From positions 1 to 64,000 of the IMG/VR virus record IMGVR_UViG_3300009093_000034: a stretch of DNA of 64,000 nucleotides; one strand, written 5' to 3'. Under the pieces are notes generated by a model, which was not told the DNA's origin, did not search any database, and worked only from the letters and a program-made list of their open reading frames with translations. The translations under genes were made by a program, and so were the position numbers. Of the stretch, positions 54,413 to 57,692 are shown piece after piece (positions within the stretch are counted from its first letter, which is position 1; each line of letters opens with the position of its first letter).

Positions 54413-54675
54413 GTGGTCCAGCTCCAAAGCATGGACAACCTACCCACCATGAAGCTGTTCATCACGTTTATCTTACTGTAGAACAGATGGAGAAGATGAC
54501 AACTCAACGTCTTCTAGCTTACTTCAAGAAACACTTGATGCATGATCCATTCTATCCTTCCAGTGAAAAAGAAAAACATGACGAGTGGGAGATGGTTAGA
54601 GCTAAAGCTCAAAGTATACTATCAAGTAGAGAACATGTTCCTTCTAAGAGGGAACTCCAAAAGAGAAAGAAATGA
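54409..54675 (+). CDS. Hypothetical protein
   Basis: ATGA coupling. Confidence 0.65.
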   Translation: MSGPAPKHGQPTHHEAVHHVYLTVEQMEKMTTQRLLAYFKKHLMHDPFYPSSEKEKHDEWEMVRAKAQSILSSREHVPSKRELQKRKK

Positions 54676-55094
54676 CACGATACGTTTTAGGTTTTCTTTT
54701 TGATGACGAAAAGAACACGGTCGTCTTGATCAAGAAAAACAAGCCTGTTTGGCAAAAAGGTCTCTTGAACGGTGTTGGTGGGAAGATCGAAGAAGGTGAA
54801 CTTCCTATAGTCGCTATGGTAAGAGAGTTTGAAGAGGAAACGTCTGTGAAAACAGACAACCTTGATTGGAAGCACTTTGCTGGTGTTGAAGGCGAAGGTT
54901 ACTCCATCGCTTGTTTCTACACCATCAGTTCTGACTACATGAAAAACGTCAAGACCATGGAAGAAGAAGTGATCGAGATTCGTAGGATTCGAGATCTTCA
55001 AGATCTTCCTATAGTCTCCAATCTTCTTTGGTTGGTTCACCTTGCAAAAGATGAAAACAATGGTAACCATCCTACTGTTCAAGTAAAGTACTAA
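54672..55094 (+). CDS. Nudix hydrolase
   Basis: LNGVGGKIEEGELPIVAMVREFEEETSV (Nudix box). Confidence 0.9.
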   Translation: MTRYVLGFLFDDEKNTVVLIKKNKPVWQKGLLNGVGGKIEEGELPIVAMVREFEEETSVKTDNLDWKHFAGVEGEGYSIACFYTISSDYMKNVKTMEEEVIEIRRIRDLQDLPIVSNLLWLVHLAKDENNGNHPTVQVKY

Positions 55095-55128
55095 ATGACT
55101 GTTATTCTTCTGTGTGTACTAATTGTAC

Positions 55129-55590
55129 ATGAGAAGAACCTATAGAATAGAAAAGTCTTTAGATATTGAGGAGTTCATTAGAATAACTAATGAATCGTTA
55201 ACCATGAAACAAGCTGCTGTGAAACTTGGTCTTCATTTTAATAGTTTCAGAAGAATAGCAGTAAAGTATGGAGTTTATCGACCTAATCGTGGAGGCAAAG
55301 GAACCCATAAGCATAAAGAAAATGGGACTACACCTCTTACTGAAATTTTGGAAGGAAACCATCCATCATATCAAACGTTTAGATTAAAACTTAGATTAAT
55401 TTCAGAAGGAATTTTTATTCCAGAATGTTCTGAATGCAAAAATACTCAATGGAATAAAAAAGAAATTCCTTTAGAGTTAGATCACATAGATGGAAATTCT
55501 TCTAACCATCTTTTAGACAACTTACGATTGTTATGTCCAAATTGTCATGCACAAACTGAGACGTATAGAGGAAAAAACAAAAAGTTTTGA
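55129..55590 (+). CDS. HNH endonuclease (homing-type)
   Basis: CSECKN...LELDHIDGNSSNHLLDNLRLLCPNCHAQT; AT-rich; ACTAATT-N4-ATG. Confidence 0.9.
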   Translation: MRRTYRIEKSLDIEEFIRITNESLTMKQAAVKLGLHFNSFRRIAVKYGVYRPNRGGKGTHKHKENGTTPLTEILEGNHPSYQTFRLKLRLISEGIFIPECSECKNTQWNKKEIPLELDHIDGNSSNHLLDNLRLLCPNCHAQTETYRGKNKKF

Positions 55591-55610
55591 GATATTACTC
55601 AAGCAAGTGA

Positions 55611-55721
55611 GCGGGAGTGGAGAAATGGTGAGACTCAGCGGACTTATGAATGCATTCTAACTAGTGCATTGAATAAATCCGCTGCTTAAGAGGCGTGCCG
55701 GTTCGAGTCCGGTCTCCCGCA
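55611..55721 (+). tRNA. tRNA-Leu (UAA if spliced at 35/36) with a 28-nt anticodon-loop insert; no encoded CCA
   Basis: Acceptor GCGGGAG/CTCCCGC-A73, D stem GAG/CTC, anticodon stem GCGGA/TCCGC, long variable arm, T-arm GCCGG-TTCGAGT-CCGGT, A15:U48; insert at 55647-55674; TGAGATATT motif at 55588. Confidence 0.8.
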
Positions 55722-55769
55722 GAAGTTGGACCGTAGAGTTCAACGATTTCCCAAAGAGGAGGATAACCA

Positions 55770-56480: not shown

Positions 56481-57692
56481 ATGGCCCGTATTGAAAAGCT
56501 GATCATGGTGACCGGTGAAGAGAATCACAACAAGGTCTATGAGCTGATCGACAACGAGAACGGTACTTGTACCGCCAAGTGGGGTCGGGTTGGCGCTGCT
56601 CTTCAGGAGTGCAACTACCCCATCAGCGAGTTTGAAAAGAAGCTCAAGGAAAAGGTCAAGAAGGGCTATCGCGTGATCACCGATCTTCTGTCTGTCGAGA
56701 AAAGTGATGGTAAGACCACCACTACGGACGACGAAGAGGTAAAGATCCAGAACATGTCCCGTGAGGCCATGGAGTTGATCAACTTCCTCCAGAGTTGTGC
56801 TAAGGGCATCGTCAAGCAGAACTACACCGTCAAAGTTGCCGACGTTACTCAGAAGCAGATCGACGCTGCTCAGGCCATCCTGGACGGACTGGTTGCTCTG
56901 TCCAACCAGAACTGGTCTCGTGAAGAGGCCAACAAGATCCTTTTGGATCTTTACAACACCATCCCCCGGAAGATGAGCAACACCAAGAACTTCCTCATCC
57001 AGATCGACAACATCACGAAGAAGCGCCTTCAGGAGTTGATCTCCAGTGAAGCCGATCTTCTTGACGTTATGCGCGGTCAGGTTCAGACCACGAACGTTGC
57101 TCCCAAGTCTTCCACTGGCGAAGTCAAGTTGGATATTGAGATTCGTCTCGCTACTCCCGATGAGATCGATGAGATCTCCAAGAAGACTGACTTTGATGTT
57201 CGTAGTGCTGCAAGGATCTATCGGGTGGAGAACACCAAGACCAAGAATCGCTACGAAAGTATCAACAAGCAGAATGAACAGCTTCTCTACCACGGTTCTC
57301 GCAGCCAGAACTGGTGGTCGATCATCAACGGCGGTTTGAAGATTCGTCCGACCAACGCCGTTCACACTGGCTCGATGTTCTCCGATGGTATCTACGCTGC
57401 TGACAAAGCTCAGAAGTCTCTCGGTTACACCGACGGTGGTTATTGGACTGGTAGCAGTGGTTCCTCGAAGAGGTTCCTCGGCATCTACAGTTTCAACCTC
57501 GGTCGTCAGTGGGATCTGTTCGCTGGTGGTCAGCGTCATGCCAGCTGGATGATGCAGCTCAACCTGAAGAAGATCAACGACAAGGGTTTTGACTCTCTGT
57601 TCGCTAAGGGTGGAGCAGATCTTCGCAACAATGAGATGATCGTGTTCGAAGAGGCTCGCTGCACCATCAAGTATCTGATCGAGATGCGTTAA
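56481..57692 (+). CDS. Poly(ADP-ribose) polymerase-like ADP-ribosyltransferase (WGR + regulatory + catalytic)
   Basis: NHNKVY...AKWGRVG (WGR); LYNTIPRK (regulatory); LLYHGS, GSMFSDGIYAADKAQKSLGY, NNEMIVF...KYLIEM (H-Y-E triad). Confidence 0.92.
   Translation: MARIEKLIMVTGEENHNKVYELIDNENGTCTAKWGRVGAALQECNYPISEFEKKLKEKVKKGYRVITDLLSVEKSDGKTTTTDDEEVKIQNMSREAMELINFLQSCAKGIVKQNYTVKVADVTQKQIDAAQAILDGLVALSNQNWSREEANKILLDLYNTIPRKMSNTKNFLIQIDNITKKRLQELISSEADLLDVMRGQVQTTNVAPKSSTGEVKLDIEIRLATPDEIDEISKKTDFDVRSAARIYRVENTKTKNRYESINKQNEQLLYHGSRSQNWWSIINGGLKIRPTNAVHTGSMFSDGIYAADKAQKSLGYTDGGYWTGSSGSSKRFLGIYSFNLGRQWDLFAGGQRHASWMMQLNLKKINDKGFDSLFAKGGADLRNNEMIVFEEARCTIKYLIEMR

What the first reader, a model, noticed from the sequence alone, without database searches (positions are those of the whole stretch)
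55611..55721. tRNA-Leu with a 28-nt hairpin inserted in the anticodon, next to an HNH endonuclease
Seen: an otherwise complete Leu-type cloverleaf has 35 nt between the anticodon stem strands instead of 7. The extra 28 nt (TGAATGCATTCTAACTAGTGCATTGAAT) fold as AATGCATT/AGTGCATT with a CTAACT loop. Only excision at 35/36 restores CU-UAA-AA; excision at the canonical 37/38 would give anticodon UAU on a Leu body. Known: bacterial tRNA introns are self-splicing group I introns of about 200 nt or more; short protein-spliced introns are archaeal/eukaryotic and need a bulge-helix-bulge, which I can only partly fit here. Inference: either an unknown phage/bacterial splicing route, a collapsed intron remnant, or an unspliced tRNA-like decoy immune to anticodon nucleases. 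It has its own promoter motif, suggesting it is expressed.
Basis: partly seen in the sequence, partly recalled or inferred. Interest (0 to 1): 0.7.

Follow-up and report, generated by a model that had tools for sequence, protein, structure and literature searches.

The report
Interrupted tRNA-Leu at intron homing site
A soil jumbo phage's only candidate UUA/UUG-leucine tRNA gene is split inside its anticodon by a 28-base hairpin, one base from where related phages carry a self-splicing intron and beside the matching homing-endonuclease gene, so it is more likely a by-product of that mobile-element traffic than a new kind of intron, although no RNA data exist to test this.

Summary
Window 55611-55721 (+) is a complete long-variable-arm tRNA (Rfam tRNA 42 bits, threshold 29) with 28 extra nt (55647-55674) in the anticodon loop. 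Only excision between A35 and A36 gives tRNA-Leu(UAA). With the insert, the anticodon arm folds into one continuous rod. There is no bulge-helix-bulge motif and no group I core.

The context explains the site. The adjacent HNH (55123-55590) belongs to the T5 F-TflIV-like family. In 63 of 80 homologue loci a tRNA lies within 150 nt, and 45 of those are Leu(UAA). In 16 of 148 loci that tRNA carries all or part of a ~198-nt group I intron at 34/35, and in one locus (L105) the HNH is encoded inside the intron. Another phage (L147) has an unrelated 41-nt insert at the same site.

Best reading (about 0.5): a non-catalytic filler at the intron homing site, either a collapsed intron or a break-repair product. 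It probably spoils the HNH target and leaves the tRNA unable to decode. Sequence tests do not show descent from the known intron (P=0.41).

A protein-spliced mini-intron remains possible (about 0.2). The phage has three RNA ligases and no other UUR decoder. No RNA run was listed.

The parts
55611..55646 (+). tRNA-Leu(UAA) 5' part: acceptor strand, D arm, 5' anticodon-stem strand, and loop nucleotides C32 U33 U34 A35
   Evidence: ARAGORN intron mode and in-silico deletion; Rfam RF00005 at 42 bits over 55611-55721
55647..55674 (+). 28-nt insert TGAATGCATTCTAACTAGTGCATTGAAT between A35 and A36. It forms an 8-bp hairpin with a 6-nt loop. Its end bases U1 and A27/U28 pair into a 4-bp helix with U33, U34, A35, A36 and A37, extending the anticodon stem into one rod
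   Evidence: Exact and single-copy in the genome; fold and z-scores; pairing table; no 3-4-3 BHB; no Rfam family other than tRNA
55675..55721 (+). tRNA-Leu(UAA) 3' part: A36 A37 A38, 3' anticodon-stem strand, long variable arm, T arm, acceptor strand, discriminator A73; CCA not encoded
55123..55590 (+). Free-standing HNH homing endonuclease of the T5 F-TflIV-like family (155 aa from TTG at 55123; an ATG lies at 55129). It is AT-rich (about 29-37% GC against 44% for the genome) and its stop codon lies 20 nt before the tRNA
   Evidence: Pfam PF01844 at 22 bits (cut-off 21.4) and PHROG 10822 at E=1.7e-31; tblastn to BF23 hegA/F-TflIV, 47.5% identity over aa 73-152; composition; 45 of 63 tRNA-adjacent homologues lie beside tRNA-Leu(UAA)
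55591..55610 (+). 20-nt spacer between the HNH stop codon and the tRNA 5' end. No sigma-70-like promoter was detected here or upstream on this strand, so co-transcription with the HNH is the simplest reading

Best explanation
Shown: this is a phage tRNA-Leu(UAA) gene that travels with a free-standing F-TflIV-type HNH homing endonuclease. The gene is interrupted between A35 and A36 by a 28-nt, non-catalytic, hairpin-forming insert. That position is one nucleotide from the site (34/35) where homologous HNH-linked tRNA-Leu(UAA) genes in other phages carry a self-splicing group I intron.

Inferred: the insert is a product of homing traffic at that site. It is either the collapsed stub of an intron or sequence captured during repair of an endonuclease-induced break. 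At the DNA level it splits the intron-less exon junction, which is the kind of site that homing endonucleases of this type recognise. That would make the allele resistant to cleavage and let it hitch-hike with the HNH gene.

Inferred: at the RNA level the insert cannot self-splice, and no known bacterial or phage enzyme set removes such a sequence. The transcript is probably co-transcribed with the HNH and trimmed by RNase P and 3' processing. It most likely stays a tRNA-shaped RNA with a 35-nt anticodon rod that cannot decode. On this reading the gene is a recently disabled, or selfishly maintained, tRNA gene.
For: (1) The HNH family is tied to this tRNA. Of 80 IMG/VR loci with homologues, 63 have a tRNA within 150 nt, and 45 of those are Leu(UAA), plus 5 other Leu isoacceptors. 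The same holds in the T4-like phage ACG-C40, Klebsiella phage Muenster, Aeromonas phage avDM5 and the 642-kb phage LR756502.

(2) Sixteen of 148 loci carry all or part of a ~198-nt group I intron in that tRNA. Where the junction was mapped (eight loci) it is CTT|A...G|AAAA, which is position 34/35. Rfam RF00028 scores 58-69 bits (gathering 50) in five of them.

(3) In L105 the HNH, 49% identical to ours, is encoded inside the intron between the 5' exon and the intron core. So the family includes a true intron homing endonuclease.

(4) A second, unrelated phage (L147=L149=L152, HNH 40% identical) has an unrelated 41-nt insert at 34/35 or 35/36 of its HNH-adjacent tRNA(UAA). That insert shows marginal colinear similarity to the intron (P=0.027).

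(5) Decayed introns and dead tRNA-Leu genes occur in the same system: L139, L164 and L193.

(6) Our insert has no group I core. Rfam finds no family but tRNA, the genome has no RF00028 match, and there is no BHB motif. The phage encodes no EndA, RtcB or RNase III.

(7) The first 5 nt of the insert, read in the 34/35 frame (ATGAA), equal the intron's first 5 nt (P about 0.005).

(8) The HNH is AT-rich relative to the genome. A relative in run X8 seems to lack the NUDIX-HNH-tRNA block. Both fit a mobile cassette.
Against: (1) The 28 nt show no significant similarity to the intron beyond the 5-nt prefix. Local alignment gives P=1.0, the 3' end P=0.86, and the colinear-block test P=0.41. The insert ends in U rather than the omega-G of a group I intron, and it sits at 35/36 rather than 34/35.

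(2) Most HNH genes of this family sit beside an uninterrupted tRNA-Leu(UAA) with the same CTTAAAA loop, found in 46 of 53 tRNA(UAA) genes. So an insert is clearly not required for self-immunity, and the HNH target site is unknown.

(3) The tRNA body is flawless and the insert is much more structured than chance. That would also fit a maintained intron.

(4) The phage has about 50 tRNAs but no other credible UUR decoder, while UUA and UUG make up 31% of its Leu codons.

(5) Short anticodon-loop inserts are not significantly enriched at the HNH-adjacent position (5/159 against 4/341, p=0.15).

(6) All genomes carrying our insert are at least 99.9% identical. So neither decay nor constraint can be read from them.
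Confidence: 0.5

Rival explanations
1. Protein-spliced mini-intron. The rod is cut on both strands inside the 4-bp helix by a double-strand-specific endonuclease from the host or phage, releasing the 28-nt hairpin. The resulting 3'-OH and 5'-phosphate ends, held together by the anticodon stem, are sealed by one of the phage's Rnl2-family RNA ligases. This would yield the phage's only tRNA-Leu(UAA).
For: The cloverleaf is perfect and precise excision gives the canonical CUUAAAA loop. The rod is strongly structured and coaxial with the anticodon stem. Both junctions lie 3' of the two nucleotides of one base pair (A35-U28'), 10 and 12 nt from the apical loop. The genome has three PF09414 RNA-ligase genes, two of them within the tRNA cluster region. 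It shows no PNK3P-type end-healing enzyme, and none would be needed for 3'-OH/5'-P ends. The phage has no other UUR decoder while 31% of its Leu codons are UUR.

There is precedent for short, non-group-I, conserved 'enigmatic' tRNA introns of 79-93 nt in Lak megaphages (PMC6784885). Other interrupted phage tRNAs also have intact bodies: L114, L120 and L195. L195 has a clean filled/empty allele pair.
Against: No endonuclease candidate was identified. The required cuts would leave 1-nt 3' overhangs in the predicted pairing, not the 2 nt of RNase III. The interrupted arms of the other cases share no fold or junction position, so there is no common recognition motif. No case of such splicing is known in bacteria (my own knowledge). 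The other contigs are too fragmentary to test co-occurrence with ligases. No RNA run was listed.
Confidence: 0.22
2. An unspliced but functional tRNA-like RNA. LeuRS does not read the anticodon, so the RNA could still be charged. It might serve as a decoy for anticodon-loop nucleases, as a non-ribosomal leucine donor, or simply as an RNase P/3'-processing signal that cuts the HNH message right after its stop codon and so limits HNH expression.
For: The acceptor, D and T domains and A73 are intact. The tRNA lies 20 nt after the HNH stop codon with no promoter in between. In T4, tRNA processing next to segB has been proposed to limit endonuclease expression (PMC2330249).
Against: An uninterrupted tRNA would serve as a processing signal equally well, and that is what most HNH homologues have. 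Nothing in the data points to a decoy or donor role. There is no conservation beyond one phage lineage.
Confidence: 0.1
3. An archaeal or eukaryal-type intron removed by a bulge-helix-bulge splicing endonuclease.
For: The insert is short and lies in the anticodon loop. The central helix in the fold is 4 bp long.
Against: An exhaustive search finds no 3-4-3 BHB. The loops flanking the 4-bp helix are 1x1 and 1x2, and the required junctions lie inside the helix rather than in bulges. The phage has no PF01974 endonuclease and no RtcB. The gene context is bacterial-phage-like, with T4/T5-type HNH relatives and a strong Shine-Dalgarno sequence downstream.
Confidence: 0.01
4. An assembly or sequencing artefact.
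For: The insert contains a 10-bp palindrome, and palindromes can disturb assembly.
Against: The same sequence is present in two IMG/VR assemblies from different samples. A 74-kb Logan contig from run X1 carries it too, but X1 may be the window's own source sample. The 3' junction is seen in run X2 from another study.
Confidence: 0.01

Closest known systems
Group I intron in the anticodon of tRNA-Leu(UAA), classically in cyanobacteria and plastids and found here in phage tRNA genes
   Same: Same tRNA species, same anticodon loop (CUUAAAA), and an insertion point within one nucleotide. The same family of HNH gene lies next to it, or inside it in L105.
   Different: Our insert is 28 nt against about 198 nt. 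It has no catalytic core (no RF00028 match), sits at 35/36 rather than 34/35, follows A rather than U, ends in U rather than G, and shows no significant sequence similarity apart from ATGAA.
[quoted passage not shown]
   Same: The HNH is homologous to F-TflIV. It lies directly against a tRNA gene. The 20-nt spacing recalls the overlap of tRNA processing with the segB 3' end (PMC2330249).
   Different: Those enzymes sit among uninterrupted tRNA genes. Here the neighbouring tRNA is interrupted in its anticodon, and the unit lies 50 kb away from the phage's main tRNA cluster.
Collaborative homing: a free-standing endonuclease gene plus an ORF-less intron that disrupts its target (described for T-even-like phages; recalled from my own knowledge, not checked in the library)
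   Same: An endonuclease gene lies beside a gene carrying an insert at the presumptive target. Loci such as L135, L140 and L144 fit this pattern exactly, with a real intron.
   Different: In our locus the insert cannot self-splice, so immunity, if any, would cost the tRNA its function. The HNH target site has not been determined.
'Enigmatic' conserved introns in Lak megaphage tRNAs (Devoto et al. 2019, PMC6784885)
   Same: Both are short, non-group-I inserts with no Rfam match, in the anticodon loops of tRNAs of very large phages, and no mechanism is known.
   Different: The Lak inserts are 79-93 nt and reported identical across cohorts. Ours is 28 nt, known from one lineage only, and sits at a group I homing site beside an HNH gene.
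Archaeal and eukaryal BHB tRNA introns
   Same: Both are short inserts in the anticodon loop that leave the mature tRNA domain intact.
   Different: There is no BHB motif, no splicing endonuclease and no RtcB.

Membership tests
tRNA (Rfam RF00005), class II leucine type | Covariance-model score at or above the gathering threshold over a complete cloverleaf | tested here: met
   42 bits against 29, E=8.7e-8, model positions 1-71, window 55611-55721
tRNA (Rfam RF00005), class II leucine type | Long variable arm, 3-bp D stem, A73, and nearest relatives being tRNA-Leu(UAA) | tested here: met
   ARAGORN cloverleaf. Closest tRNAs in the fetched loci are Leu(UAA), 71-77% identical. An identical anticodon arm occurs in three unrelated phage Leu(UAA) genes.
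tRNA (Rfam RF00005), class II leucine type | 7-nt anticodon loop presenting a readable anticodon | tested here: not met
   The gene has 35 nt between the stem strands. A 7-nt CUUAAAA loop exists only after hypothetical removal of 55647-55674.
Group I intron (Rfam RF00028) | Catalytic core (P3-P9) detectable by the covariance model | tested here: not met
   No RF00028 match in the region at E up to 10 or anywhere in the genome at E up to 0.01. The same model scores 58-69 bits in L135, L140, L144, L184 and L245.
Group I intron (Rfam RF00028) | 5' exon ending in U (U-G pair in P1) and intron ending in G | tested here: not met
   In the only Leu-restoring frame the 5' exon ends in A35 and the insert ends in U. 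The phage introns show CTT|A...G|AAAA.
Group I intron (Rfam RF00028) | Sequence descent from the tRNA-Leu(UAA) intron family (collapsed remnant) | tested here: inconclusive
   The prefix ATGAA is identical (P about 0.005). The colinear-block alignment gives P=0.41 and the 3' end P=0.86.
BHB (archaeal/eukaryal) tRNA intron | Two 3-nt bulges separated by a 4-bp helix, with the splice sites in the bulges | tested here: not met
   An exhaustive search of the arm finds no 3-4-3 motif. The junctions lie inside the 4-bp helix.
BHB (archaeal/eukaryal) tRNA intron | A splicing endonuclease (PF01974) and an RtcB-type ligase are available | tested here: not met
   Neither is found in the phage genome, and the control genomes gave hits. 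The host is unknown, so host enzymes cannot be tested.
HNH homing endonuclease, F-TflIV-like | HNH/His-Me finger motif and homology to characterised members | tested here: met
   PF01844 at 22 bits (cut-off 21.4); PHROG 10822 at E=1.7e-31; 47.5% identity to BF23 F-TflIV over aa 73-152
HNH homing endonuclease, F-TflIV-like | Genomic association with the presumed target gene or intron | tested here: met
   45 of 63 tRNA-adjacent homologues lie beside tRNA-Leu(UAA). 16 of 148 loci have all or part of the group I intron. The HNH is intron-encoded in L105.
HNH homing endonuclease, F-TflIV-like | Site-specific cleavage or nicking of the insert-less allele | not testable with these tools
   This needs a biochemical assay. 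The target site is unknown.
Collaborative-homing unit (free-standing endonuclease plus protective insert) | The insert lies in the endonuclease's recognition site and blocks cleavage | not testable with these tools
   This is only inferred from the 1-nt distance to the intron insertion site. Most homologues sit beside uninterrupted tRNA-Leu(UAA), which argues that an insert is not needed.
Collaborative-homing unit (free-standing endonuclease plus protective insert) | The insert is phenotypically neutral because it self-splices | tested here: not met
   No ribozyme core is present.
Lak-type short phage tRNA introns | A short insert with no Rfam match in the anticodon loop of a huge-phage tRNA | tested here: met
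Lak-type short phage tRNA introns | The insert is conserved across diverged genomes | tested here: inconclusive
   Only near-identical genomes (at least 99.9%) carry it. Pattern scans of viral, metagenome and genome collections found no other tRNA with this stem plus an insert.

The most novel reading that the evidence does not exclude
Phages may possess a protein-only tRNA splicing route. Short hairpin inserts that occupy group I homing sites in tRNA anticodons, such as this 28-nt rod and perhaps the 41-94-nt inserts seen in other phages and the Lak 'enigmatic introns', would be cut out by a double-strand-specific endonuclease. The anticodon loop would then be resealed by phage Rnl2-family RNA ligases. 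That would give both immunity to the neighbouring homing endonuclease and a working tRNA.
Probability: 0.2. Interest if true: 0.85.

Novelty: new variant of a known kind. Interest (0 to 1): 0.5.

Why it matters
If the insert is only a filler, the locus is still a useful natural snapshot. One HNH family is seen in four states: inside the tRNA-Leu(UAA) group I intron, free-standing beside an intron-containing tRNA, beside an intron-less tRNA, and beside tRNAs whose homing site holds short non-catalytic inserts. That series bears on how mobile introns are assembled and how they decay, and on how phages become immune to each other's homing endonucleases.

The locus also shows that default tRNA finders miss such genes. 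Group I introns in phage tRNA genes appear under-reported. The Lak paper states that introns in phage tRNAs had not been reported before it.

If the insert is instead removed at the RNA level, it would be the first protein-dependent tRNA splicing known in a bacterial system. It would also offer a mechanism for the unexplained Lak-type introns.

Tried and rejected
- Default ARAGORN and the whole-window Rfam gathering search found no tRNA. This was a filter and penalty effect, not absence.
- A BHB motif was rejected by exhaustive search.
- Repeat-family or MITE origin was rejected because the insert is single-copy in the genome.
- Synteny through flanking proteins failed. The downstream ORF matches only itself among 5.8 billion proteins, and the PARP-like gene finds only the same phage.
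- Pattern scans for the same anticodon stem plus an insert of 1-31 nt returned only ordinary hairpins besides the source contig. These covered viral (inserts up to 29 nt), metagenome and genome collections.
- Scans with each tRNA half found no empty-site allele in IMG/VR.
- No RNA run was listed. DNA runs showed no insert-less allele.
- The collapsed-intron hypothesis was tested by local, end and colinear-block alignments. It is not supported for our insert.
- Enrichment of short inserts at the HNH-adjacent position is not significant.
- Co-occurrence of RNA ligase or RtcB with interrupted tRNAs in other contigs is uninformative, because those contigs are 2-49% complete.
- A possible second tRNA(UAA) at genome 111582-111661 is not credible by the covariance model.
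- The 85-nt L195 insert has no match in GenBank phages or Rfam.
- Two ARAGORN 'intron' calls of 134-140 nt (L182, L187) were set aside as probably mis-joined neighbouring genes.
- The L147, L215 and L193 interrupted tRNAs are supported by ARAGORN and by eye but did not reach the Rfam thresholds used.

Full report
**The object**

The window is the first 64 kb of a 305,833-bp IMG/VR phage contig with direct terminal repeats, from rhizosphere and soil metagenomes.

At 55611-55721 on the + strand lies a complete class II tRNA cloverleaf. Its anticodon-stem strands (GCGGA/TCCGC) are separated by 35 nt instead of 7. Default ARAGORN and the whole-window Rfam search missed it. ARAGORN in intron mode finds it with a 28-nt intron. 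Rfam's tRNA model run on the small region scores 42 bits against a threshold of 29 (E=8.7e-8) over exactly these coordinates.

Of the eight possible 28-nt excision frames, only 35/36 restores the loop CUUAAAA with anticodon UAA. The group I site 34/35 would give UUA, and 36/37 to 38/39 would give UAU. After deletion of 55647-55674 ARAGORN calls an 83-nt tRNA-Leu(taa). The resulting anticodon arm, CAGCGGACUUAAAAUCCGCUG, is identical to that of uninterrupted Leu(UAA) genes in three unrelated phage contigs.

The insert is single-copy in the genome. It is present in an independent IMG/VR assembly of the same phage (99.97% identical). Its 3' junction appears in a contig from another soil study. So it is not an artefact.

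**Structure**

With the insert, the anticodon arm folds into one rod. The order is:
- the anticodon stem;
- a C32-A38 mismatch;
- a 4-bp helix made of U33-A37, U34-A36, A35-U28' and U1'-A27';
- a G/GA internal loop;
- an 8-bp helix;
- a CUAACU loop.

The energy is -18.8 kcal/mol, with z=-5.5 against dinucleotide shuffles and z=-3.1 when only the interior is shuffled. Both junctions needed to make Leu(UAA) lie inside the 4-bp helix, each 3' of one member of the A35-U28' pair. In that pairing the cuts would leave 1-nt 3' overhangs.

An exhaustive search finds no 3-4-3 bulge-helix-bulge. No Rfam family other than tRNA matches.

**Genome context**

The phage has about 50 tRNA genes at 108-160 kb, including Leu(GAG) and Leu(CAG) but no other UUR decoder. 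A weak candidate at 111.6 kb is not credible by the covariance model. UUA plus UUG make up 31% of leucine codons.

The interrupted gene sits alone at 55.6 kb, 20 nt downstream of an AT-rich HNH gene. It lies between a NUDIX gene and an ORFan followed by a WGR-PARP-like gene. No sigma-70-like promoter precedes it on its strand.

The phage encodes no EndA-type endonuclease, RtcB, RNase III or PNK3P-type phosphatase. It has three PF09414 RNA ligases and no group I intron.

**The neighbour explains the site**

The HNH is homologous to T5/BF23 F-TflIV. The F-Tfl genes lie in the T5 tRNA cluster (PMC2330249).

Of 80 IMG/VR loci encoding homologues, 77 have a tRNA within 1.5 kb and 63 have one within 150 nt. 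Of those 63, 45 are tRNA(UAA) and 5 are other Leu isoacceptors. The same pairing is seen in cultured phages ACG-C40, Muenster and avDM5, and in the 642-kb phage LR756502.

I then ran a census that does not depend on where an insert lies, by finding every T arm plus acceptor pairing not explained by default ARAGORN. It revealed that many of these HNH-adjacent tRNA(UAA) genes are about 280 nt long.
- They carry an intron of about 198 nt at CTT|ATGAAAATTGAG...GTGGTAAG|AAAATC, which is position 34/35.
- Rfam confirms a group I intron, at 58-69 bits against a threshold of 50.
- By blastn, 16 of 148 loci carry all or part of it.
- In L105 the HNH, 49% identical to ours, lies inside the intron. The 5' exon is upstream of the ORF, and the intron core and 3' exon are downstream.

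So the HNH family is a tRNA-Leu(UAA) group I intron homing-endonuclease family. It is seen intron-encoded, free-standing beside intron-containing genes, and free-standing beside intron-less genes.

Fragments of the intron and truncated tRNA-Leu genes also occur, in L139, L164 and L193.

**Other short inserts**

Intron-mode ARAGORN and the census found further interrupted tRNAs in these loci.
- L147=L149=L152: a 41-nt insert at 34/35 or 35/36 of a tRNA(UAA) beside an HNH 40% identical to ours.
- L114: an insert of about 35 nt, Rfam tRNA 45 bits.
- L120: about 94 nt, 34 bits.
- L195=L196=L197: 85 nt at 34/35 of tRNA-Thr(AGU), 53.5 bits.
- L215: 36 nt.

For L195, uninterrupted orthologues in the same position in L186, L187 and L205 give a clean filled/empty pair.

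These inserts are unrelated in sequence, fold and exact position. Their enrichment at the HNH-adjacent position is not significant (5/159 against 4/341, p=0.15).

Short, Rfam-negative tRNA introns of 79-93 nt have been reported as 'enigmatic' in Lak megaphages (PMC6784885). I found no later paper that resolves them.

**Is our insert a collapsed intron?**

Read in the 34/35 frame, it begins ATGAA like the intron (P about 0.005 by shuffling). Nothing else is significant: local similarity gives P=1.0, 3'-end similarity P=0.86, and an end-to-end colinear-block alignment that allows free long deletions P=0.41. L147's insert is marginal in the last test (P=0.027).

Descent from this intron family is therefore not shown for our case. 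It is also not excluded, since only one intron lineage was available for comparison.

**Interpretation**

What is shown:
- the gene is a tRNA-Leu(UAA) interrupted one nucleotide from the classic group I insertion site;
- it lies beside a homing endonuclease of the family that serves that intron;
- the insert has no ribozyme core and no BHB;
- no known splicing endonuclease is encoded by the phage.

What is inferred:
- the insert arose from homing traffic at this site, either as an intron stub or as captured sequence at a repaired break;
- it splits the exon junction that such endonucleases normally recognise;
- it leaves a non-decoding tRNA-shaped RNA.

I give this about 0.5. The main weaknesses are the following.
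- Most family members coexist with an uninterrupted neighbour, so the insert is not needed for immunity.
- The cloverleaf is flawless and the rod is strongly structured.
- The phage lacks any other UUR decoder.

These points keep a protein-spliced mini-intron alive at about 0.2. The model would be a double-strand-specific cut followed by sealing by one of the three Rnl2-family ligases. An unspliced functional RNA gets about 0.1.

All genomes carrying the insert are at least 99.9% identical, and no RNA run was listed. So neither evolutionary constraint nor splicing could be tested.

**Verdict**

The feature is best filed as a new variant within the known tRNA-Leu(UAA) intron and HNH homing system. 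It is of moderate interest in its own right, and of high interest only if RNA evidence shows excision.

Noticed in passing
genome G000:C1:159775-159849 (outside the window): A tRNA with anticodon CUA, of the amber-suppressor type (ARAGORN labels it 'Pyl'). TAG is the rarest stop codon in a crude ORF set (15 of 254). I made no claim of recoding and did not test it.
   Followed up: no
genome G000:C1:145485-146273, 155937-156881, 222433-223527 (outside the window): Three PF09414 RNA-ligase family genes. The second carries an N-terminal HNH-like CxxC...HH motif fused to the ligase domain, and the third has a PHA02142 OB-fold domain.
   Followed up: partly
window 54672-55094 and 56481-57692: A NUDIX hydrolase and a WGR+PARP-catalytic-domain protein (PHROG 23333) flank the HNH-tRNA unit, forming a possible NAD/ADP-ribose module.
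   Followed up: no
window 54558-55750: In mine-metagenome run X8, a contig of a roughly 90%-identical relative joins 54558 to 55750 with 149 other letters between. The NUDIX-HNH-tRNA block therefore seems absent or replaced there. One side of the joint is only 33 nt, so this is a lead and not a finding.
   Followed up: partly
L105:1401-2175: A tRNA-Leu(UAA) gene with an intron of about 690 nt. An HNH ORF, 49% identical to the window's HNH, lies between the 5' splice site and the group I core, so it is a true intron-encoded homing endonuclease in a phage tRNA gene.
   Followed up: yes
L195:1923-2083 (also L196 and L197), compared with L186:1400-1475, L187:1980-2055 and L205:1932-2007: An 85-nt, three-hairpin insert lies exactly between A34 and G35 of tRNA-Thr(AGU), downstream of an HNH homologue. 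Uninterrupted orthologues sit in the same position in related contigs. The insert has no Rfam or GenBank-phage match.
   Followed up: partly
L098-L177, tRNA(UAA) genes beside HNH homologues: Many 'tRNA-Leu(UAA)' genes next to HNH homologues are only 73-77 nt long, meaning they have a short variable arm unlike bacterial tRNA-Leu. Some of these also carry the group I intron (L170, L184).
   Followed up: no
L165:2214-2529 (minus strand): A permuted tmRNA (RF04321, 94 bits) lies in a phage tRNA cluster near an HNH homologue.
   Followed up: no
genome G000:C1:108387-108545 (outside the window): A second, partial paralogue of the HNH (51% identity over aa 102-153) lies between two tRNA genes in the main tRNA cluster.
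   Followed up: no
genome G000:C1:111582-111661 (outside the window): An 81-nt tRNA-shaped sequence with a CUUAAAC loop and a good T arm and acceptor. It is not supported by the tRNA covariance model, with only an 18.9-bit tRNA-Sec-like match. It may be a degenerate tRNA(UAA).
   Followed up: partly
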